Virus record (IMG/VR): IMGVR_UViG_3300030019_000003
Coordinates: 186,001-250,000 of that record
Strand: one strand, 5' to 3'
Length of the DNA stretch: 64,000 bases
This document shows, piece after piece, positions 25,503-45,332 of this stretch (positions within the stretch are counted from its first letter, which is position 1; each line of letters opens with the position of its first letter). A model generated the notes under the pieces. That model had not been told where the DNA came from, did not search any database, and saw only the letters and a list, made by a program, of their open reading frames with translations. The translations under genes were made by a program, and so were the position numbers.

Positions 25503-26666
25503 TTACGCCACTGCGTTTATTGCGTAGATAGTTTCTGATTCTGAAAGACTGGTATTATAAGTACCAGATGTATCTGTAGAACTTTTACCAGTAACATCTG
25601 TTGCCGATAGGGATGATAATCTTTTATTACCATTAGTTCTATAATAGTTTGTATCTCCTGCAGAGTCTTTATTCCAAGAAGAGTCAACATTGTTTAAACC
25701 TGTAACAACATTCTTATAGTCACCTGTGCCATAGGTAGTGTTAGTGTTTGTTGTGTTATCTAGATTACCTATAACGTTATCTAGACTTGATTTAGTATAA
25801 TTTTGAGATAATGAACCTGAACCTGCTGGATCTGTGCTTACAACTGAATTTAAAACAGAAAGCTTTGTCTCAGTATTATTATCATTTGTCCCACTTAAAG
25901 AATATCCTAAACCACTGTAGATAGTATCTCTACTTGTACCATTTGATAGCATACCATCTATAAAGGTAGATGATGTTGCTGCGCCAGAGCTACTAACATG
26001 ATTAATAACACTCCCTGTTGTAGCTGTTGTAACACTACTATTTGACATAATACCACTAACAGCTTTAGTTAAACAACGTGCTAAACTAGAATTAAGTAAG
26101 TTTGTTAAACCTAGCTTTCTGGATAATGATGAACCTATCTTATTTAAGGCACTTAGGAGGCCACTCAGTACACTTCCTATCAAACAGACAGGTATTGATA
26201 TCAAACCACCTATGGTTGACCCAAATAAGCTTGTAGCTGTAGAGTTAATCATATTCGTAAGACCCATGATACTGGTTGTTGGTAATCTTACACTAACGTT
26301 ATCAAAACTACTTAAGTTATTAACATTTCCTAAAACACCGTCCATACCATTACTACGACGTCCATTACTACATAACGTTGAACCACCATAACCTAAATTT
26401 CTAGAATCACGAGAAGTATAATAGTTACTTCGTTGGTTAGAAGATAGTCCAGAGGTGTTACACGATGTATCAAACATTCCTAAAGATGATGATAAACTTT
26501 GATTACCCATTCTGACATTACTACCAATACCACTCATAATGTCACTACCACTATCGGATAATGAACGAGTATTATTAACAGCATTAGTATCGGATGCTGT
26601 AGAGTAGTTACCGACTGGTATGTCGGTTAGGCTTGATAATGATAGCCTGTCCGTGGATATAGCCAT
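25503..26666 (-). CDS. Ser/Thr/Asn/Gly-rich protein, putative virion component
   Basis: 387-aa low-complexity ORF; AGGAG RBS. Confidence 0.65.
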   Translation of the reverse strand: MAISTDRLSLSSLTDIPVGNYSTASDTNAVNNTRSLSDSGSDIMSGIGSNVRMGNQSLSSSLGMFDTSCNTSGLSSNQRSNYYTSRDSRNLGYGGSTLCSNGRRSNGMDGVLGNVNNLSSFDNVSVRLPTTSIMGLTNMINSTATSLFGSTIGGLISIPVCLIGSVLSGLLSALNKIGSSLSRKLGLTNLLNSSLARCLTKAVSGIMSNSSVTTATTGSVINHVSSSGAATSSTFIDGMLSNGTSRDTIYSGLGYSLSGTNDNNTETKLSVLNSVVSTDPAGSGSLSQNYTKSSLDNVIGNLDNTTNTNTTYGTGDYKNVVTGLNNVDSSWNKDSAGDTNYYRTNGNKRLSSLSATDVTGKSSTDTSGTYNTSLSESETIYAINAVA

Positions 26667-26760
26667 AAGCTCCTCCTGTATATTTATAAATCAAAAAATA
26701 CAGTTTAGACTATTGTATAGACATATATTATTTAAGTATAAACTACTAAAGGAGAATCCT

Positions 26761-27645
26761 ATGGGATTAGCAATTAAGGATATCAACATTACTAGACTGG
26801 CAACACATGATGCAGCCTTTGGTGATGTTATTGAAAAAATAATAATCAGTATTAAGGATACTGATACTAATGTTGTAACAAACTATCCCATTGATGAGAT
26901 GGAGATAGGTACTGATATCATTATAGCCGATGATGTTACTGAAGGGGCTAGAGTTACAGTAATACTTAAAAATGGTAAACCTTCTAACAAGGAACAATCT
27001 ATTAACCATGTTATAGGATTGTTTGTAGGTCGCGAAACAGCATATGTGTGCGTAAAAGCCAAGAATGGGTTTAAGGTTTTTGTAATTGGGTCTATAGAAC
27101 ATCTCGTTGGATTAAGTACAGCTAATAAGGTATTTAAAACTGAACCGCATGTAACATGTAGCTTTGGTTGGTTTCCACTTTATGCTGGTGGTGTCACTAA
27201 GTATTTTAAATCTTTTAGTGCCGGAGCTGACTTCATTGTTTATTACGCTGATAAGGCTGAAACAACCTATGCTGGTAAGAATAACTACGATGAGTATAGC
27301 GATGGAGAAGCACTATTAGCTTTACCATATGGTGTTGTTTATGCTAATAAAGTTTTAGTTCCAGATGTTAAACAAATAGAGGCTACTTTAAGTTACTCTG
27401 GGTTATGTAAAAATAAGCTTATTAATAACGCAGTAACAGTGTTAACAACTGAGATTAATCATAGACCTAATGCTACACTTAAATTGGTAAAGGGCCTTAT
27501 GAATGATGTATTTGTAACTGTTACACCTGAAACTAAAAAAGAGTGCGAAGCATTCCTAGCATTAAAAGAAGCGCAAGGAGGTATTCTATTACAGAATATT
27601 GATTTCGGTGGTGTTCTTGTTTTAAATAAAGAAAAGGGCAACTAA
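26761..27645 (+). CDS. Hypothetical protein
   Basis: Start revised from 26620 to ATG 26761 (AAGGAG upstream). Confidence 0.7.
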   Translation: MGLAIKDINITRLATHDAAFGDVIEKIIISIKDTDTNVVTNYPIDEMEIGTDIIIADDVTEGARVTVILKNGKPSNKEQSINHVIGLFVGRETAYVCVKAKNGFKVFVIGSIEHLVGLSTANKVFKTEPHVTCSFGWFPLYAGGVTKYFKSFSAGADFIVYYADKAETTYAGKNNYDEYSDGEALLALPYGVVYANKVLVPDVKQIEATLSYSGLCKNKLINNAVTVLTTEINHRPNATLKLVKGLMNDVFVTVTPETKKECEAFLALKEAQGGILLQNIDFGGVLVLNKEKGN

Positions 27646-29030
27646 TGAAATATATTAATAACGAAAAACACCAGTTAGTATTAACAATTAACAGTCCGTT
27701 TGACCCATTCCCTTCTACGCTATCCCATCAAAAATTAAATACTATTGTTGATGAGGCTATCTGTTTTGAAGATGTTTTAGTGTCTTTTTACAAGGCTATG
27801 AAACTGCATTCTAAATCTATCGAGTTACTTGGTAAAGCTTATGTTTATAAAAATGAACTTGAAACTGATCCTAGTAAAGATTATATTAAACATATGAAAA
27901 CGTTATCTAAACTTTACACAGAGCTTACACAGTTACTTAAAGAAACCGGTGCCGGTGTGATCAAAGATGTTAAAATCACCACTGAAGATAAAGAAATGAT
28001 ACTAACGATTACATACGAATATTTAGTAGTAACTCTTCTTGATTTTATTAAGAAGGCTGAAAACTTCTTTAGGTCCGCTGGTAATACAAAGCCTATTACA
28101 GGAACACGAGAAACATATCTTAATCTGATTAGGGATGAGTCTTACACGTTTTTATCTGGATTTTCAAATGGTATATTGCACATTAACCCTGATAAAATAC
28201 TTGAAAAGCTACTTATGACTAATGGTAGTAAAATGAATATTAGTACTATCATAGCTACAGCTGCTTTTATTAAATCAAGATATGATATTAGTAAAGTGCT
28301 TCAGGCCTATAATGATGACGGTATCAATACTTCCAGGAACTCTTTACATCTGGTTTTCGGTAAGGTAACCGATGCTTACACACAAGCCTTGAATAACCCT
28401 AAGTATGAACACTATATAAAATTTATTACTCGTAGCAAAAGTGATGAATCCTTCGAATTATCCTATGATGATAAAAGTATGGAAGATGTAAAACTTAATA
28501 TCTCACATCTGATAAATGAACTTGATGTATTCGAGCCAACTGTGAATAATCGTTTTGCAGGTACTGTTATCCTAAATGCCGAGGCTACACTCTATAAGAA
28601 CGAGCACTTGCTCACATCGCTTATAAAATACAAAGATGTAGAACAACACTATGAGAAATATCTTAAGAAGGGTATTGATCCTGAAGGAGATATTGTTACA
28701 TCAGAAGATACTATGTTGCCATCGACATTTATGAATCTTGTACATACTTTGTTAAATATCAATATCGCTACTTTAATTAGTATGGATTTAGAAAAACGTC
28801 TTGATAAGAATAAATCTGAACCTATAGTTTTAAATAGAGATATCCTAACTCCCGAATTCTTAAAAGAGCAGCCTGGTGCATATGAGGATATTGTTCATTA
28901 CAGTCTTATTGTACCAATGTTAGCTAAAGCTACCAAGTTAGGTTATTTTTACAAACGTGTTGTTACTATGATAAATACGCTTACATTGTTAAGAATTATT
29001 CTTGATACTGATAAGCCAATGAGTAACTAG
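27645..29030 (+). CDS. Hypothetical protein
   Basis: 461-aa ORF, TAATG-coupled to the upstream gene. Confidence 0.75.
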   Translation: MKYINNEKHQLVLTINSPFDPFPSTLSHQKLNTIVDEAICFEDVLVSFYKAMKLHSKSIELLGKAYVYKNELETDPSKDYIKHMKTLSKLYTELTQLLKETGAGVIKDVKITTEDKEMILTITYEYLVVTLLDFIKKAENFFRSAGNTKPITGTRETYLNLIRDESYTFLSGFSNGILHINPDKILEKLLMTNGSKMNISTIIATAAFIKSRYDISKVLQAYNDDGINTSRNSLHLVFGKVTDAYTQALNNPKYEHYIKFITRSKSDESFELSYDDKSMEDVKLNISHLINELDVFEPTVNNRFAGTVILNAEATLYKNEHLLTSLIKYKDVEQHYEKYLKKGIDPEGDIVTSEDTMLPSTFMNLVHTLLNINIATLISMDLEKRLDKNKSEPIVLNRDILTPEFLKEQPGAYEDIVHYSLIVPMLAKATKLGYFYKRVVTMINTLTLLRIILDTDKPMSN

Positions 29031-29052: not shown

Positions 29053-29085
29053 AATAAATTTTAACACTATATTATTTAGTTAGAG
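29053..29085 (+). promoter_or_regulatory. Putative early promoter, near-identical to the chmA upstream element
   Basis: AATAAATTTTAACACTATATTATTTAGTTAGAG; 30/33 identical to 43372-43404; TATATTA core like phiKZ early promoters. Confidence 0.65.
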
Positions 29086-29124
29086 TGTATACGCTCTAGA
29101 AAAAATCACCGGTGAGGAGAAAAT

Positions 29125-29589
29125 ATGTCAGAAGAGAAAAAACCAGTAGAGATTACGGGTTCGTTTAAAGTTGAAGTTGTCGGTAAAGTAGCGTCAGCTG
29201 TTCTTGATAATCAAGAAGCATTCGTTGAAGCGGCTAAAGGTCAAGGTATTACAAAAGTGGTTCTGGAAGATGTACAACGTTTTCAAAAAGCTTACATTGA
29301 TGCTGCAGGTGAAAAAGCTGTTGAAGAAGGTAAGAAGATTCTTAAAGGTAACAAAGATCTTGATTCTGTTTCACTTCAAGCGCCATATACTACAAATGCA
29401 AATGGCTCTGTAGCGTATACTGTTACTCGTGAGAAAACCTTTACACCTGGATTCGGTTCTGGTGAGCCTGTAACAAAATCAACTATTCGTACCGTTATCA
29501 CTGATCCTTATGCAAAACCAACACAAAAATTTATCAAAGGTTTGGAAGCGATGCTTACAAAAGACCTTCTTGGTATTGATCTAAAATAA
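29125..29589 (+). CDS. Small jumbo-phage protein with HU/IHF-like sequence features
   Basis: GITK helix, then GSVAYTVTREKTFTPGFGSGEPVTK arm and KPTQKFIKGL helix; GAGGAG RBS; fold is inferred. Confidence 0.55.
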   Translation: MSEEKKPVEITGSFKVEVVGKVASAVLDNQEAFVEAAKGQGITKVVLEDVQRFQKAYIDAAGEKAVEEGKKILKGNKDLDSVSLQAPYTTNANGSVAYTVTREKTFTPGFGSGEPVTKSTIRTVITDPYAKPTQKFIKGLEAMLTKDLLGIDLK

Positions 29590-29619: not shown

Positions 29620-29653
29620 ACAACTACATATCCAGAAATGGATATGTAGTTGT
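29620..29653. terminator. 15-bp stem, GAAA loop, between convergent genes
   Basis: ACAACTACATATCCA-gaaa-TGGATATGTAGTTGT. Confidence 0.8.
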
Positions 29654-29728: not shown

Positions 29729-30613
29729 TTAAGCAGAAGGCGTGTCAGAATACCCAACACCTGTTTGTGCGGTAACACTTGAATCAATTGCTGTAGGAAC
29801 AATGATCTTAGTGTCAGGCATATATTTAAGAGTGTTGATCGTTGGAAGAATCGTAGCTGCTAGAGCATGCGTTGCTTCGTTATTAATAGTAATGTTTTTA
29901 AATTCAATACTAATATCTTTAGTATCACCTGCTGAGTGTAAGTCACGTGAACCTGTTCTGTCACCTGCGGTTGAAGGATAGAAGTTAGTAGAATACCAAG
30001 CATCAACAACAACAAGTTGTGTAATATCTGGTTCGATAAACAACATAGTACCCGCATAGAAATCTGGAGTATACGCACCTGTAAATGCACTTGAAAAAGC
30101 ATCTAAGTTTGCTACTAAAGGTTTCTTAGTAAATGGATCCATAATTGTGTAACGAATTACTTTATCCCAGAACTTAACAACAGACTTTAAACTCTTCTCT
30201 TTCCAAGTATAAGTAATACTGGATTGTGAATAGGTACTGTTAGTTGGTTCTGATTGTTGTTCGCCACCACCACCAAATGGATGATCATCAGAATCAACCG
30301 TTAGTGTTGTGTTAAGACCATCAATAGTTTCCATCGCTGTTTCCAACAAATGCTTATACGCTTTAATCCACTCTTCAGAGTTTGGTAAATAAGTAAATGC
30401 TGTTGGAGCTGCAATAAGAATAGGAATAACATTTCTACGTACATACGCTTGATTACTTACATAAACATGAGCGTATTCGCCACCATCCATAGCGCCAAGA
30501 ACAGGCATCTGCCCACTTTGGCCACCACGGGATAAATTCATACTTGCTGTATTGGTATCAGAATAGCCTGTACCCTTAGCTATCAATAAGTCGCTTAATG
30601 TTTTAGTTGCCAT
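29729..30613 (-). CDS. Tail tube protein (phiKZ gp30-like)
   Basis: VSNQAYVRRNVIPILIAAP, TIDGLN.TL and FIEPD motifs; directly downstream of the sheath gene. Confidence 0.85.
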   Translation of the reverse strand: MATKTLSDLLIAKGTGYSDTNTASMNLSRGGQSGQMPVLGAMDGGEYAHVYVSNQAYVRRNVIPILIAAPTAFTYLPNSEEWIKAYKHLLETAMETIDGLNTTLTVDSDDHPFGGGGEQQSEPTNSTYSQSSITYTWKEKSLKSVVKFWDKVIRYTIMDPFTKKPLVANLDAFSSAFTGAYTPDFYAGTMLFIEPDITQLVVVDAWYSTNFYPSTAGDRTGSRDLHSAGDTKDISIEFKNITINNEATHALAATILPTINTLKYMPDTKIIVPTAIDSSVTAQTGVGYSDTPSA

Positions 30614-30623
30614 ATGCTATCCT

Positions 30624-32822
30624 TTAGTTGCTAGTTGATGTAAGATCAGATGCACGATATACACCTGTGTTATAGACTTGTTTAGTCTTAATAACATTAC
30701 CATAAAGCTTACATATAGCATGCCAACTGTAACCTCTGGCTGTGTCATTGTCGTCAATATAGACAACAGGAACAACAGTAAATAAGCTTCCGAACACATC
30801 TTTTAACTCTTTGTTGTAATCCGCTTTAACTTTATCTATGAACTCAGCATCTGTTAGTTTTGTACTACCAGTATTCATACGCCAAACTTTATCACTTGTT
30901 TTAGCTAACACTGTTAATGCAAAAGAACCCCACCAGCTATTTAACACTGAGGTATCATCACTGTAGACAGTTTGCCATGCAGCAACATGATAAGATGATC
31001 TGTCATAAGGTTGTGCATAAACAAGACCGTTATTCCATAATGTTGTTTTATAAGACTCAGGAATATCTTCAGGTTTGTAATTGATGATATAATCTAACTT
31101 AGCTTTAGGAGCTGTATCAAAAAGTTCGTCGATTTTCCATAGTCCATTAGAGGCACCCATCATAGCTGCGTTTTTAACAGCAAGTTCATAAGTCAATGGT
31201 ACCAAATTGGTATAGTCAGAATTTTTAATATTACCTTCACCCAGACAAATGATACATCTCGCAACACTTGTTCCAAAATAGGTTGACTCTGGAGCTAACA
31301 TCAAACGAGTTTCCAAGGCTGTTCCAATAGCAGCAGCATCTGTTAGTGATTGGTATTTTTCACCCATAGAGGCAAGATAGGTTGCTAATGCTACAGCAGT
31401 ATCTTTACGTACAGTGATATAGTTAATCATAGCCATTTTAATAGGCAAAGAGAAACCTGAATCGTACATAATAGAATCGACATTGATAGCCGTATCCATA
31501 ACACCCGTATCATCAGAATCTAAATAACGTTTTAACTCAACAGCAAAAGCATCTTCAAATGCTTGGTCTGTTAATGTACCATCGTCGCTACCTGATAAAT
31601 AAATAGGTGTTGAACCTGAGAATTGTACTTCAGCTTGAGTACCTGTTAATGTAGAACTTTCAGTATCTTTACTAATTGTAAAATACTGTACAGCCGTAGA
31701 TGATTTACATACGAATGGATTCATTAAGTAAATATCATTTATAATTGCTGTAGCATCCGTAGTTGTAAAATCAAACCATGATGAAGATGCTGCATTGATG
31801 CCGTCGTTCCATGCTGCAGGTGTATTGCTAAGATACTTAACTTCTTCATTAACAAAAAGTTTAAGAGCAGTTTCAAAGTTACTTCTGTAGAAATACAACC
31901 CATCATACTCTTTATATGCAATACGTTTTGTTTTATCTGTTTCGTTAAACCATAAGTTTTTAAACACACTCTCAAAGTCAATCTTACCATTAGTAGCAGG
32001 GTGAATAGCTTTCTCTTTTAAAGAAATTATTACTGAGGTTTCACCTGATAATGTTCTAACATTAATAGGGCTGCTGTTTTCAGTTACTTTGTTAACAAGA
32101 TACAAACCATAAGGTAATGCTTTTGTTTTAGAAATGATTGTAGTATCAGCATCCGAATTATACATCGTTGTTAAACCAAAACCATTAAGATTATAACCTG
32201 AACCTTTTTCAGAAGCTCTTGCCTCATAGATAGGAACCATAATGGATTGATTCGTACCATCTGTCATGGTACCTGTTTTAGATTTTTTAAGACCTAGAGG
32301 TACGCTATCAGGATCAAATGTAATTTTACCACTAACATCTTTAGCATAAGTATCATACTCAGAGATGTACTTAATCTTATAACCTTTAATAGTAGGCGTT
32401 GTAGGGTCTACTTTATAGGCTCCTGTTGAAGAATCTGCTACAAGATCACCTGTAGAGGTTCTAAGGTAATTAGGAACATCTGTATAGAGATAATCCATAT
32501 AGACAGTTACATTAGCTTTTGGACCTGCATCTAAAGATACAAGACGTAGCCCCATAACAATATTACCTTGGTTAAAAAGACCTTCTATAAAAGGTGTTTG
32601 ATGGTGATAAAACTTACCTGATTTATCAATAGCTGCATCTGTTGCGGCTAATCTAAATTTGTCCGATGTGAAAATCGTACGTTTAGTAGGGCCCTTAGGT
32701 GCTCTATAGACAACCCACGGCATGTGCGTTGGAATATCCTCTTCCGTAGCAAGTACCGTCCTTGGACTTTGATCATCAGCACCCAAATTAACAGAACCAG
32801 GCGTAGCGCTATAATAGCTCAT
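30624..32822 (-). CDS. Tail sheath protein (phiKZ gp29-like)
   Basis: 732 aa; GADDQS, PTHMPWV...APKGP, PIYLSGSDDG, YDSGFSL, PESTYFGTSVAR and RGYSWH. Confidence 0.88.
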   Translation of the reverse strand: MSYYSATPGSVNLGADDQSPRTVLATEEDIPTHMPWVVYRAPKGPTKRTIFTSDKFRLAATDAAIDKSGKFYHHQTPFIEGLFNQGNIVMGLRLVSLDAGPKANVTVYMDYLYTDVPNYLRTSTGDLVADSSTGAYKVDPTTPTIKGYKIKYISEYDTYAKDVSGKITFDPDSVPLGLKKSKTGTMTDGTNQSIMVPIYEARASEKGSGYNLNGFGLTTMYNSDADTTIISKTKALPYGLYLVNKVTENSSPINVRTLSGETSVIISLKEKAIHPATNGKIDFESVFKNLWFNETDKTKRIAYKEYDGLYFYRSNFETALKLFVNEEVKYLSNTPAAWNDGINAASSSWFDFTTTDATAIINDIYLMNPFVCKSSTAVQYFTISKDTESSTLTGTQAEVQFSGSTPIYLSGSDDGTLTDQAFEDAFAVELKRYLDSDDTGVMDTAINVDSIMYDSGFSLPIKMAMINYITVRKDTAVALATYLASMGEKYQSLTDAAAIGTALETRLMLAPESTYFGTSVARCIICLGEGNIKNSDYTNLVPLTYELAVKNAAMMGASNGLWKIDELFDTAPKAKLDYIINYKPEDIPESYKTTLWNNGLVYAQPYDRSSYHVAAWQTVYSDDTSVLNSWWGSFALTVLAKTSDKVWRMNTGSTKLTDAEFIDKVKADYNKELKDVFGSLFTVVPVVYIDDNDTARGYSWHAICKLYGNVIKTKQVYNTGVYRASDLTSTSN

Positions 32823-36993: not shown

Positions 36994-37119
36994 AGGTATC
37001 CTTTTAGTATAATCTATTTAATTATACGTATGTTATATTTTAATAATGGTTAATGATATATTATTTAACTAATAACCTATAACTAGTTAAGTTACAAGTA
37101 TAACCCCAAAGGAATAAAT

Positions 37120-43371: not shown

Positions 43372-43404
43372 AATAATTTTTAACAACATATTATTTAGTT
43401 AGAG
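43372..43404 (+). promoter_or_regulatory. Putative early promoter of chmA
   Basis: AATAATTTTTAACAACATATTATTTAGTTAGAG, followed by a hairpin at 43403-43426. Confidence 0.65.
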
Positions 43405-43472
43405 AACAATAACGTACTGTTGTTCTTAAAAATACTTTTGTCGACAAAAGTACAACATCACAAGGAGATACC

Positions 43473-45332
43473 ATGAATGGTAACAACAATGGAGCAGGGT
43501 TAACGTTTGATGAAAATGAGGGTACTGGAAATCCAGCAGTAGGTCAAAATGAGAATTTGCAGCAACCTAATGGATACGCGCCTTATCAAAATGAGGGTTC
43601 AACCACGTATGATAATGGATTCAATTTGTTTCAAAGTGGCTTCTTATCAACACAACCTGGCTCAGAACTTACTGCGAAATACTCTAAAGGTATTTTAGAG
43701 TTTATCGAAAAAATTAAAAGAACCGGTTTTAAAGTTAGCGAACTTGACAACGCTACGATTACAAATTTAAAATACAGTTCTATCATCATCTCTGCGGTCA
43801 ATGGACCAGAAGTACTTTATTACACATTGCTTATTGCCGCTACAGGTAAAGCTTCTCATAATGTTAAAGATTACTTCAATGTTCTTTCTGATGCAGAACG
43901 TATGAGTCTTAAAGATGCAGATGAAGCAGTGCGCTCATTGTACTTACCTTATATCGCATTTGATAATGACTATAAAGCAGCGATCGAAGCAAAACTTGAT
44001 GAAACTTATGGTACAAAATACAAATACGTTTCTCTTGATGGTTTCATCATTCATGAAGATGTTGTTGACAGTGAAGATCTATATCGTCATATGTTTGCAA
44101 AAGCGTTTAATGCGTTCCATGCTGAAACAAAAATGAGTGATGGTGTTGGCGATGCTACTATTGAAAACATTGCAAGATCTGCAAACTATCGTATCGCAAG
44201 TAACGGATGTAGAAACAGCGTTTCAGCATTGACTCCATTTGGTGCTGCTGTTAGAACTGACTGGCAGTTATCTTTGATTCCACAACCTCGTAAACAATCT
44301 TCTAACAGTATTCACACTGAAGGTGCTGTTGGACCTATCTTAACAGTTGGTGGTTTTGTAGATGCTATCCCTGAACAAACAATGATCCAAGAAGGCTTTG
44401 GTCAAATTGCAGGTATCCGTTATCACCCACATATTATCGTAACAAATGTTGCAAGTGCGTATGAAACAACGGGTATGGCTCTTCTTGCTATTACTGTTGG
44501 TGTAAGTATGGTTAAACCTGAAATGTATCTTGCGTCATTATCGCCAAGAGCTAAAAACAATCCAGGCGCATTGAATGTATTTGCTAACCTTGCTAACAAT
44601 CCAAATGGTGGTGAGTTCTTAGATATGACAACTGCAGCGTATACTCCTGATGCTATCATGGATTCATTGTCTAAAATGTTTACATTGGCTCCAGTGTTCT
44701 CTATTGATATTGAAACTTTTGGTCCTGATGCTTATACACTTTCTGCATTCACAAGTCTTACTAAAGAGAACCCAACAACATTCGCAGGTGCTGCAGCTTA
44801 CTTGGTTAACGTTGCGTCTAAACTTACAAAAGGCATGTTTCCTACTGAATATGACCTTAACAAAGTTATTGCTGGATTTACACGTGTCCCAACAGGTTCA
44901 TATATTGATCATGGTTCTAATGTACCATCTGATATTCGTGACTTTGATATGATCCGTGTTGTTAATGAGTCTGTTAACAATCCTAAATTGATTTACAAAT
45001 GGTACAACTCTAACACTAACCCAAATGGTTACAATGAAAAAGTTGAAGTTCTTGCAGCTATTAATCCAGGTGCTAAGATCACTGGTGAAGCAAGACGTGT
45101 TACGTTACATCCTGAGTTTATTGCAACACTTGTTAACGCAGTTTCTGCAAATAACCTTAGACCAAGTGCTACTCCTGAGGTTGAACTACAAACAACAAAT
45201 GGTTTCGTAGGTGGTGGTTTCTTTGCTACTGCTGGTGTTACCAATGTTGGTTTTGGTAACTTTGGTGGATTTGGTACAAATAGACCTGTAGGCTTTGGTA
45301 ACAACCAAGCTACATTTAGTAATCGTTTCTAA
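43473..45332 (+). CDS. chmA: Chimallin, phage nuclear shell protein (phiKZ gp54 / 201phi2-1 gp105-like)
   Basis: 619 aa; collinear motifs FGAAVRTD, PHIIVTNV, NPGALN, PVFSIDIETFG, SDIRDFD and TGEARRVTLHPEFI; lies upstream of the nvRNAP beta' gene. Confidence 0.9.
   Translation: MNGNNNGAGLTFDENEGTGNPAVGQNENLQQPNGYAPYQNEGSTTYDNGFNLFQSGFLSTQPGSELTAKYSKGILEFIEKIKRTGFKVSELDNATITNLKYSSIIISAVNGPEVLYYTLLIAATGKASHNVKDYFNVLSDAERMSLKDADEAVRSLYLPYIAFDNDYKAAIEAKLDETYGTKYKYVSLDGFIIHEDVVDSEDLYRHMFAKAFNAFHAETKMSDGVGDATIENIARSANYRIASNGCRNSVSALTPFGAAVRTDWQLSLIPQPRKQSSNSIHTEGAVGPILTVGGFVDAIPEQTMIQEGFGQIAGIRYHPHIIVTNVASAYETTGMALLAITVGVSMVKPEMYLASLSPRAKNNPGALNVFANLANNPNGGEFLDMTTAAYTPDAIMDSLSKMFTLAPVFSIDIETFGPDAYTLSAFTSLTKENPTTFAGAAAYLVNVASKLTKGMFPTEYDLNKVIAGFTRVPTGSYIDHGSNVPSDIRDFDMIRVVNESVNNPKLIYKWYNSNTNPNGYNEKVEVLAAINPGAKITGEARRVTLHPEFIATLVNAVSANNLRPSATPEVELQTTNGFVGGGFFATAGVTNVGFGNFGGFGTNRPVGFGNNQATFSNRF

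What the first reader, a model, noticed from the sequence alone, without database searches (positions are those of the whole stretch)
29125..29589. Candidate HU/IHF-like phage chromatin protein co-regulated with chimallin
Seen: a 154-aa ORF inserted antisense among tail genes with its own promoter and terminator. Its promoter is 30/33 identical to that of chmA. The sequence order (GITK helix, strand, GSVAYTVTREKTFTPGFGSGEPVTK, KPTQKFIKGL) parallels HU (GLSK helix, GTFEVRERAARTGRNPQTGEEI, KPGKALK). Inference: an abundant early DNA-packaging protein for the phage nucleus.
Basis: inference. Interest (0 to 1): 0.68.

Follow-up and report, generated by a model that had tools for sequence, protein, structure and literature searches.

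The report
Early essential jumbo-phage HU-like dimer
A small gene of an uncultured nucleus-forming jumbo phage, driven by the same early promoter type as the nuclear-shell gene, encodes a distant member of the essential but uncharacterised PhiKZ gp186 family; it is predicted to form an intertwined dimer with the strand/helix order of bacterial HU/IHF, but a relative's GFP fusion was diffuse in the cytoplasm, not in the phage nucleus.

Summary
A 154-aa ORF (29125-29589, +) has a strong ribosome-binding site, its own promoter-like element and a 15-bp terminator hairpin, and converges on the tail tube and sheath genes. Its promoter belongs to a class of about 20 sites in the 252-kb genome, resembling promoter motifs predicted for other phiKZ-related jumbo phages. 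It shares with chmA an extension (TAGTTAGAG plus a leader hairpin) found nowhere else in the genome.

The protein has no Pfam or PDB sequence match. It belongs to a family of 81 representatives, linked by profile comparison, PHROG cross-hits and fold search to PhiKZ gp186, PhiPA3 gp222 and Goslar gp214. PhiKZ186 is published as early-expressed, and its knock-down abolishes plaques.

HU membership fails on sequence (PF00216 absent, hhalign 2%) and on charge (pI 7.8; Pseudomonas-phage relatives 4.3-5.3; HU above 9). The PhiPA3 homologue's GFP fusion is diffuse cytoplasmic.

Verdict: a real early gene with a weakly supported HU-like fold. The 'phage-nucleus chromatin' reading is not supported.

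The parts
29059..29085 (+). Early-class promoter-like element: TTTTAACA, 2 nt, ATATTATT, then the extension TAGTTAGAG shared only with chmA
   Evidence: The motif type matches the predicted OBP/N1M2/201phi2-1/phiKZ promoter motifs listed in PMC7058600 Table 2. Kept upstream of the homologous gene in relatives G002/L003, L041 and L042.
29080..29099 (+). Leader hairpin (8-bp stem) starting inside the promoter extension
   Evidence: -8.2 kcal/mol. An analogous hairpin follows the chmA promoter (-9.9) and is seen in relatives. It is not general for the promoter class.
29114..29119 (+). Shine-Dalgarno GAGGAG, 5 nt before the ATG
   Evidence: read from the sequence
29125..29589 (+). CDS, 154 aa: PhiKZ gp186-family protein, predicted homodimer with DNABII-like topology and an extra N-terminal hairpin
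29620..29653 (.). Bidirectional intrinsic-terminator-like hairpin (15 bp) between the converging ORF and the tail tube gene
29729..30613 (-). Tail tube protein gene (conserved neighbour)
   Evidence: PF23806 2.8e-64; phrog_3185. The same neighbourhood is seen in G002/L003, L042 and Goslar.
43378..43404 (+). The matching promoter-like element upstream of chmA
43473..45332 (+). chmA (chimallin, major nuclear-shell protein)
   Evidence: phrog_4795 1.8e-22; PF25677 33.7 bits against a cut-off of 27

Best explanation
ORF154 is the representative, in this uncultured chimallin-encoding jumbo phage, of the PhiKZ gp186 / PhiPA3 gp222 / 201phi2-1 gp283 / Goslar gp214 family.

It is transcribed as its own unit from an early-class promoter, presumably read by the virion RNA polymerase. 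The promoter is of the same near-consensus sub-type as chmA's, is followed by a leader hairpin, and the unit ends at a strong terminator.

The product is a small, obligate, intertwined homodimer. Its core (residues ~28-138) has the a-a-b-b-b-a order of DNABII proteins (HU/IHF), with a longer second helix and an added N-terminal hairpin that pairs with the partner's sheet.

I infer that it acts at the start of infection, outside the mature phage nucleus (cytoplasm, or the stage before the shell closes), as a factor needed to establish infection.

The mechanism I think most likely for this neutral-to-basic branch is binding of nucleic acid (the incoming genome or early phage transcripts) across the sheet and hairpin arms, in the manner of HU.

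My sub-probabilities:
- real early gene: 0.9
- gp186-family membership: 0.85
- homodimer: 0.75
- genuine DNABII-like fold: 0.55
- nucleic-acid binding: 0.4
- chromatin of the phage nucleus: 0.1

Shown: gene anatomy, promoter class, family link, predicted fold and predicted dimer. Taken from the literature on homologues: early expression, essentiality, cytoplasmic GFP signal. Inferred: ligand and mechanism.
For: Gene and signals.

Conservation:
- 81 representatives at E<=1e-3, nearly all 137-165 aa.
- The same position between the head protease block and tube/sheath in G002/L003, L042 and Goslar.

Family link:
- AgentSmith gp75 matches the family profile at 2.6e-15 and Goslar gp214 at 1e-3.
- phrog_9746 hits Goslar gp214 (1.2e-10), AgentSmith gp75 (2.3e-8) and PhiKZ gp186 (1.9e-7). 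phrog_16459 is gp186/gp222 (1.7e-67 and 1.8e-63). Each of these two PHROGs hits 8 family members.
- hhalign of the family against 8 gp186-type proteins: 93.4%, E 2.4e-7, 73 columns.
- BFVD fold hits with probability 0.97-1.0 to proteins whose lengths equal the gp186 orthologues of Noxifer, Psa21, Phabio and KTN4.
- The gp186 model has the same element order.

Fold: pLDDT 95.6; full-length HU/IHF superpositions.

Dimer: ipSAE 0.85 against 0.00 for the best of 3 controls. This mark was reached by 20 of 30 proteins solved as pairs and 1 of 23 solved as single chains. The runs agree in >=91% of contacts and the partner's pLDDT is >=89.

Conserved basic columns: 102 (99%), 118 (81%), 134 (83%), 138 (77%).

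Literature:
- PhiKZ186 is an early transcript. Two antisense oligomers gave +++ and ++; Table 1 lists +++ PFU and +++ ChmA loss.
- PhiPA3 gp222 was labelled by both ChmA- and RecA-miniTurboID; its GFP fusion is diffuse cytoplasmic.
- Goslar gp214 has TATATTAC upstream. PhiKZ has it upstream of gp185, which precedes gp185.1 and gp186 on the same strand.
Against: - There is no sequence signal to PF00216.
- Charge is unlike DNABII, and the Pseudomonas-phage branch is acidic with a short hairpin. A function shared by the whole family is therefore unlikely to rest on basic arms.
- The most conserved basic residues (102, 118) lie in the predicted subunit interface and may be structural.
- The link to gp186 covers only 73 columns. 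The gp186 model was built on an alignment of this family, so it is partly circular, and its pLDDT is only 73.
- ChmA loss after knock-down is seen for many essential genes, the capsid gene included, so it does not place the protein upstream of ChmA.
Confidence: 0.45

Rival explanations
1. One reading: a true HU/IHF-type protein made early in large amounts, imported into the chimallin shell, where it coats and compacts phage DNA (phage chromatin).
For: - DNABII-like topology, a predicted intertwined dimer and hairpin arms absent from the listed interface contacts.
- A promoter shared with chmA.
- No canonical HU gene in the genome that could do the job instead.
- PhiPA3 gp222 was biotinylated by nuclear RecA-miniTurboID: 4th by peak area, but in 1 of 3 trials.
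Against: - The GFP fusion of PhiPA3 gp222 is diffuse cytoplasmic at 45 min, whereas 8 other hits were nuclear.
- pI is 7.8 here and 4.3-5.3 in PhiKZ-type relatives, against 9.2-10.0 for DNABII controls.
- No PF00216 signal.
- RecA-miniTurboID is translated in the cytoplasm and could label abundant cytoplasmic proteins there (my inference).
Confidence: 0.1
2. A protein-binding early factor. The dimer is a scaffold that binds a host protein (takeover or counter-defence) or transiently handles ChmA or another early phage protein before the shell forms. On this reading the resemblance to HU is only a common helix-plus-sheet arrangement.
For: - Fast sequence divergence: tblastn finds only same-genus relatives, and the family is listed as 'non-core'.
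- Acidic in Pseudomonas phages.
- Cytoplasmic GFP signal and labelling by ChmA-miniTurboID in 2 of 3 trials.
- The promoter sub-type and leader hairpin shared with chmA are kept in two phages whose ChmA proteins are 34% identical.
- Weak Z to HU; pilin and DUF155 matches score higher.
Against: - gp222 is not in the listed ChmA-GFP or ChmB pull-downs.
- The family spans phages of Pseudomonas, Escherichia and Bacillus hosts and uncultured hosts, which argues for a phage-intrinsic or universal target.
- HU/IHF chains align over their full length in three independent libraries.
Confidence: 0.3
3. A virion or tail-associated protein, as its place beside the tube and sheath genes might suggest.
For: A conserved position next to the tail tube and sheath in four phages.
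Against: - It is on the opposite strand to tube and sheath, with its own early-class promoter and terminator.
- The PhiKZ and PhiPA3 copies lie elsewhere, next to thymidylate kinase, and the record notes that mark neighbouring genes as structural do not mark them so.
- PhiKZ186 is described as an early transcript.
- The GFP fusion is not in phage bouquets, unlike the tail proteins gp12, gp164 and gp166.
Confidence: 0.03

Closest known systems
PhiKZ gp186 family (PhiPA3 gp222, 201phi2-1 gp283, Goslar gp214, Bacillus phage AgentSmith gp75; PHROGs 16459, 9746, 32697)
   Same: - Size 134-161 aa, encoded by chimallin-type jumbo phages.
- Profile-profile match 93.4%; PHROG cross-hits; fold hits in BFVD.
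- The same predicted element order.
- An early-type promoter motif upstream.
- In Goslar, the same place and orientation beside the tail tube.
   Different: - Identity to gp186 is below what tblastn or phmmer can detect.
- This branch has a longer b4-b5 hairpin (12- and 11-residue strands with a 9-residue Pro/Gly-rich loop) and is neutral to basic (median pI 7.8). The Pseudomonas-phage branch is acidic (4.3-5.3) with a short hairpin.
- In PhiKZ and PhiPA3 the gene sits next to thymidylate kinase, not next to the tail tube.
- No function is published for any member.
DNABII proteins: HU, IHF, Hbb, phage TF1, ASFV pA104R (Pfam PF00216)
   Same: - Element order a1-a2-b1-b2-b3-a3.
- Whole chains superpose on residues ~25-139 (85-93 residues, rmsd 3.7-5.6 A).
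- ESM-Atlas rows 1 and 3 are PF00216 clusters.
- Predicted obligate intertwined dimer, with a2-a2' contacts on the dyad and a1-a2' contacts.
- Hairpin tip absent from the listed interface contacts.
- Conserved basic residues on b4, on b5 and at the start of a3.
   Different: - No PF00216 match at any threshold tried; hhalign 2.4%.
- 154 aa against ~90 aa: an extra N-terminal hairpin (14-27) and a 32-residue second helix.
- pI 7.8 against 9.2-10.0.
- The homologue is cytoplasmic, not on phage DNA.
- DNA binding is untested.
Promoter motifs predicted for phiKZ-related jumbo phages (phiKZ TATATTAC; OBP/N1M2 TTTYARRYAKATATTATYWWADTG)
   Same: The motif here, tTTTAAcAAtATATTATTtA, fits the OBP/N1M2 consensus almost base for base. 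phiKZ chmA and Goslar gp214 carry TATATTAC upstream.
   Different: Assigning this class to early genes and to the virion RNA polymerase rests on my knowledge of phiKZ transcription studies, not on data for this phage. The extension TAGTTAGAG plus a leader hairpin is specific to this gene and chmA.

Membership tests
DNABII / HU-IHF (Pfam PF00216 Bac_DNA_binding) | Sequence match to the PF00216 profile at or above the gathering score | tested here: not met
   - No Pfam hit at E<=10 for the protein.
- PF00216 is not among the 25 families listed (of 83) in the scan of 77 family members at E<=1.
- No hit in the six-frame genome at E<=10, while 11 of 14 control genomes ring.
- The family profile finds no HU/IHF chain in the PDB at E<=10.
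DNABII / HU-IHF (Pfam PF00216 Bac_DNA_binding) | Profile-profile homology to HU/IHF | tested here: not met
   hhalign of A2 against 10 HU/IHF/TF1-type sequences gives probability 2.4% (relaxed) and 0.1% (global). The relaxed alignment is in the structural register but is not significant. The HU profile was small, so this is a weak test.
DNABII / HU-IHF (Pfam PF00216 Bac_DNA_binding) | Fold: a1-a2-b1-b2-b3-a3, superposable on solved HU/IHF | tested here: inconclusive
   [not shown]
DNABII / HU-IHF (Pfam PF00216 Bac_DNA_binding) | Obligate intertwined dimer built on a1/a2 | tested here: met
   Prediction only. ipSAE 0.85 against 0.00 for the best control; ~290 contacts; a2-a2' contacts (46, 50) and a2-a1' contacts (57 with 33/36/37).
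DNABII / HU-IHF (Pfam PF00216 Bac_DNA_binding) | Protruding b-ribbon arms with a tip proline and basic residues that wrap DNA | tested here: inconclusive
   Residues 104-116 are absent from the listed interface contacts. Pro is the commonest residue in column 110, in 52% of members. Columns 102, 104 and 118 are basic in 99%, 60% and 81%. The arm is short in the gp186 branch.
DNABII / HU-IHF (Pfam PF00216 Bac_DNA_binding) | Strongly basic protein that binds DNA | tested here: not met
   Charge: pI 7.8 (net +1), family range 5.0-9.6, gp186 branch 4.3-5.3, against 9.2-10.0 in ten DNABII controls. DNA binding itself is not testable with these tools.
PhiKZ gp186 family | Detectable homology to gp186 / gp222 / Goslar gp214 | tested here: met
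   hhalign 93.4%, E 2.4e-7. phrog_9746 and phrog_16459 each hit 8 family members, and also hit gp186, gp222, Goslar gp214 and AgentSmith gp75. The A2 profile hits AgentSmith gp75 at 2.6e-15. The direct single-sequence comparison is weak (5.5%).
PhiKZ gp186 family | Same fold | tested here: met
   BFVD hits with probability 0.97-1.0 and TM 0.36-0.63 to proteins of Noxifer (228 aa), Psa21 (140 aa), Phabio (136 aa), KTN4 (134 aa), Eowyn and PhiEaH1. Three of these lengths equal those of the gp186 orthologues fetched. The gp186 model has the order a-a-b-b-b-a (its alignment came from this family, so the test is partly circular).
PhiKZ gp186 family | Encoded by a chimallin-encoding jumbo phage and expressed early | tested here: met
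   chmA is present here and in relative G002. An early-type promoter motif lies upstream here and in G002, L041, L042 and Goslar. Actual timing is known only for PhiKZ186, from the literature.
PhiKZ-type early (virion RNA polymerase) promoter | Transcription start mapped downstream of the motif, and early timing | not testable with these tools
Only the motif match is shown.

The most novel reading that the evidence does not exclude
Nucleus-forming phages carry a very diverged DNABII-type dimer, so far hidden as the 'non-core, uncharacterised' gp186 family. It is co-expressed with chimallin from a dedicated promoter-plus-leader module and handles the injected genome or the first transcripts in the window before the shell closes. 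On this reading the family is in fact conserved across Chimalliviridae, from Pseudomonas phages to a Bacillus phage.
Probability: 0.2. Interest if true: 0.75.

Novelty: new member of a known kind. Interest (0 to 1): 0.5.

Why it matters
PhiKZ186 is one of the strongest uncharacterised hits in the published antisense screen of PhiKZ (PMC12571901). No fold, oligomeric state or wider distribution has been reported for it in the library I could search.

This locus links that gene to a much larger family: 81 clusters at 50% identity, with members in phages of Pseudomonas, Escherichia and Bacillus hosts and in uncultured phages. It also gives:
- a confident model and a predicted obligate dimer;
- a concrete hypothesis (DNABII-like nucleic-acid binding) that gel-shift assays can test;
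- a conserved promoter and leader module shared with chmA, which could be used to study early regulation.

It also shows that 'non-core' status in chimallivirus core-genome lists can come from sequence divergence rather than from true absence.

Tried and rejected
- DNA and tblastn searches of the phage collection with the locus and the protein found nothing.
- The word-index protein search found only one relative.
- Pfam, PDB sequence and PDB profile searches found nothing.
- The ESM-Atlas feature search gave no usable hit, and the Atlas's own model is poor, pLDDT 0.48.
- Foldseek against the PDB gave nothing below E 0.098.
- hhalign of the family against single-sequence gp186 was too weak (5.5%). 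It became significant only with an 8-sequence gp186 alignment.
- A word search with gp186 found only near-identical proteins.
- The search for related loci with the 77-row alignment failed for lack of conserved stretches. The 10-row alignment found only the two known contigs.
- hhalign against HU/IHF was not significant.
I left them out, did not send them elsewhere, and used A5 instead.
- One literature search was wasted on DOI strings. Searches for 'phage nucleus' with HU-like or IHF found no paper.
- The virion-protein reading was rejected (see rivals).
- No other genetic code was used, and no contig looked human.

Full report
CONTEXT. The window is bases 186001-250000 of a 252,159-bp IMG/VR virus record with direct terminal repeats, rated complete. 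It is a distant chimallivirus. It encodes chimallin (43473-45332; phrog_4795 at 1.8e-22; PF25677 at 33.7 bits against a cut-off of 27). It also encodes multi-subunit RNA polymerase pieces, a phiKZ-type tail sheath and tube, and an S80 head protease. No cultured phage is close: the best tail-tube identity is 37%, and the DNA searches are blank.

OBSERVATION. The 154-aa ORF at 29125-29589 (+) is real.
- GAGGAG sits 5 nt before the ATG.
- A perfect 15-bp hairpin at 29620-29653 lies between the ORF and the converging tail tube gene, and reads as a terminator on both strands (z -5.2).
- The element TTTTAACAnnATATTATTTAGTTAGAG lies at 29059-29085 and again at 43378-43404 before chmA. These are the only two copies in the genome, even with four mismatches allowed.

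Two qualifications apply:
- The gene converges on the tail genes but shares its strand with the two unknown genes upstream.
- The element is the best-matching pair within a larger class. About 20 intergenic sites, all on the + strand and all 27-130 nt upstream of a start codon or so, share tTTTAAcAAtATATTATTtA.

That consensus fits the promoter motifs predicted for OBP, N1M2, 201phi2-1 and phiKZ (PMC7058600 Table 2). From my own knowledge, the phiKZ TATATTAC motif marks early genes read by the injected virion RNA polymerase.

The ORF154-chmA pair is 33/44 identical, against a class mean of 25.5 +/- 3.2. What is private to the pair is the extension TAGTTAGAG and a hairpin that starts inside it (-8.2 and -9.9 kcal/mol).

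The module is conserved. In relative G002 (ChmA 34% identical), the homologous gene is preceded by ATATTATTTATGTAGAG and chmA by ATATCATTTAGATAGTG. Contigs L041 and L042 keep ATAT-AT...GTAG before the gene. Goslar gp214 has TATATTAC upstream, as does phiKZ chmA.

THE PROTEIN FAMILY. Pfam, PDB sequence, tblastn and word-index searches are blank or nearly so. The exhaustive search found 81 cluster representatives (18 at E<=1e-10), nearly all 137-165 aa; I aligned 77 of them as A2.

Several lines connect this family to known phage genes:
- A2 hits Bacillus phage AgentSmith gp75 (2.6e-15) and Goslar gp214 (1e-3).
- phrog_9746 hits Goslar gp214, AgentSmith gp75 and PhiKZ gp186 (1.2e-10, 2.3e-8, 1.9e-7). 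phrog_16459 is PhiKZ gp186 / PhiPA3 gp222. Each of these PHROGs hits eight A2 members.
- hhalign of A2 against eight gp186-type proteins gives 93.4% probability, E 2.4e-7, over 73 columns.
- The fold search in BFVD returns, at probability 0.97-1.0, uncharacterised proteins of Eowyn, PhiEaH1, Noxifer, Psa21, Phabio and KTN4. The lengths of three of these equal the gp186 orthologues I fetched.
- An AlphaFold model of gp186 (pLDDT 73, built on an alignment drawn from A2, so partly circular) has the same order of elements with a shorter hairpin.

The gene's position is kept in G000, G002, L042 and Goslar: S80 protease, one or two genes, this gene, then the converging tube and sheath. In PhiKZ and PhiPA3 it sits by thymidylate kinase.

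FOLD. The model is confident (pLDDT 95.6, pTM 0.78). Its elements are b14-19, b22-27, a32-39, a44-75, b81-87, b95-106, b116-126 and a134-149.
- Foldseek against the PDB finds nothing below E 0.098.
- In the ESM Atlas, rows 1 and 3 of ten are PF00216 clusters. BFVD lists several phage HU-type proteins at E ~0.2.

The DNABII topology is thus the only full-length match that recurs, but no single score is significant by the tool's own guide.

The homodimer test passes. ipSAE is 0.85 against 0.00 for the best of three controls. This mark was reached by 20 of 30 proteins solved as pairs and 1 of 23 solved as single chains. The runs agree in at least 91% of contacts and the partner's pLDDT is at least 89. 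The alignment was my own, so the calibration holds only roughly.

The interface is very large (~290 contacts). It comprises a2-a2' contacts on the dyad (46, 50), a2 with a1', the N-terminal hairpin with b3', and a3 with b5'. Residues 104-116 at the hairpin tip are not listed among the interface contacts, which the tool notes is not proof that they are free. An a1/a2-based intertwined dimer with a protruding hairpin is how I recall DNABII dimers being built.

AGAINST HU MEMBERSHIP.
- PF00216 is absent from the protein, from the families listed in the scan of 77 members, and from the genome.
- The family profile finds no HU chain in the PDB.
- hhalign against ten HU/IHF/TF1 sequences gives 2.4%.
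- The pI is 7.8; the family ranges 5.0-9.6 with median 7.8; the gp186 branch is 4.3-5.3; ten DNABII controls are 9.2-10.0.
- The best-conserved basic residues (columns 102 and 118) lie in the predicted interface.

WHAT HOMOLOGUES DO.
- PhiKZ186 is called an early expressed transcript. Two antisense oligomers against it gave +++ and ++. Table 1 lists it as 'uncharacterized, non-core', with +++ loss of plaques and +++ loss of ChmA (10.1101/2024.07.31.605949; PMC12571901). ChmA loss is not specific, because the capsid gene shows it too.
- PhiPA3 gp222 was biotinylated by ChmA-miniTurboID (2 of 3 trials) and by RecA-miniTurboID (1 of 3 trials). Its GFP fusion in infected cells is 'diffuse cytoplasmic', and it is absent from the listed ChmA and ChmB pull-downs (PMC10643120). 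A GFP tag on a small intertwined dimer may mislead, and only 45 min was sampled. As it stands, this speaks against a resident nuclear chromatin protein.

CONCLUSION. The gene is a genuine member of the early promoter class and a new, distant member of the gp186 family. That family is far more widespread than its 'non-core' label suggests.

It remains statistically weak, and family membership fails on sequence and on charge.

I rate the possibilities as follows:
- a real DNABII-like fold: about 0.55
- nucleic-acid binding: about 0.4
- a protein-binding early factor: about 0.3
- phage-nucleus chromatin: about 0.1

No reads tool was used on any stretch. No contig looked human. Table 11 was used throughout.

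Noticed in passing
window 1090, 26725, 29069, 37058, 41725, 43388, 47639 (start of ATATTATT); 13 more sites elsewhere in the genome: A class of about 20 promoter-like sites with consensus tTTTAAcAAtATATTATTtA. All are on the + strand and nearly all are intergenic. They probably define this phage's early regulon.
   Followed up: partly
window 37058-37100 and genome positions 97639, 107453, 131306, 159353: A sub-family of the same promoter class carries ATATTATTTAATTAATAAC followed by a palindrome (AACTAGTTTACTAGTT or similar). The sites are up to 36/44 identical to each other, so this is a second co-regulated group or a repeated cassette.
   Followed up: no
window 29080-29099 and 43399-43424: The ORF154 and chmA leaders both begin with a stable hairpin directly after TAGTTAGAG. 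The same is seen upstream of G002 chmA and of the L041 and L042 homologues, but not in most other sites of the class. It may be a 5' stabiliser or part of promoter recognition.
   Followed up: partly
whole genome (not located in the window): Exact palindromes AGTAGGGAATTCCCTACT (4 copies) and ACAGGGATATCCCTGT (4 copies), and the direct repeat TCTGTTCACCGAAC (5 copies). Their function is unknown.
   Followed up: no
L003:9441-12824 and L042:8786-11995, compared with window 30624-32822: The tail sheath proteins of two relatives carry Kelch or RCC1/WD40-type beta-propeller insertions (1127 and 1069 aa). The sheath here is 732 aa without such an insertion.
   Followed up: no
window 25503-26666 (-): A 387-aa Ser/Thr/Asn-rich, low-complexity protein with no family match lies between the head-protease block and the genes upstream of ORF154.
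   Followed up: no
window 26620-27645 (+): The mechanical ORF start at 26620 is probably wrong. An early-class promoter at 26725 and an RBS (AAAGGAGAATCC) precede an ATG near 26758, which would give a protein of ~295 aa. Neither it nor the 461-aa protein that follows (27645-29030) has any family match.
   Followed up: partly
L019:5218 (phiKZ 199217) and L006 (Goslar, ~125 nt upstream of gp214): The phiKZ-type motif TATATTAC lies upstream of phiKZ gp185, suggesting that gp185, gp185.1 and gp186 form one early unit. It also lies upstream of Goslar gp214, in a context very like that of phiKZ chmA (AAAAA-TTGAG-n-TATATTAC-TAA).
   Followed up: partly
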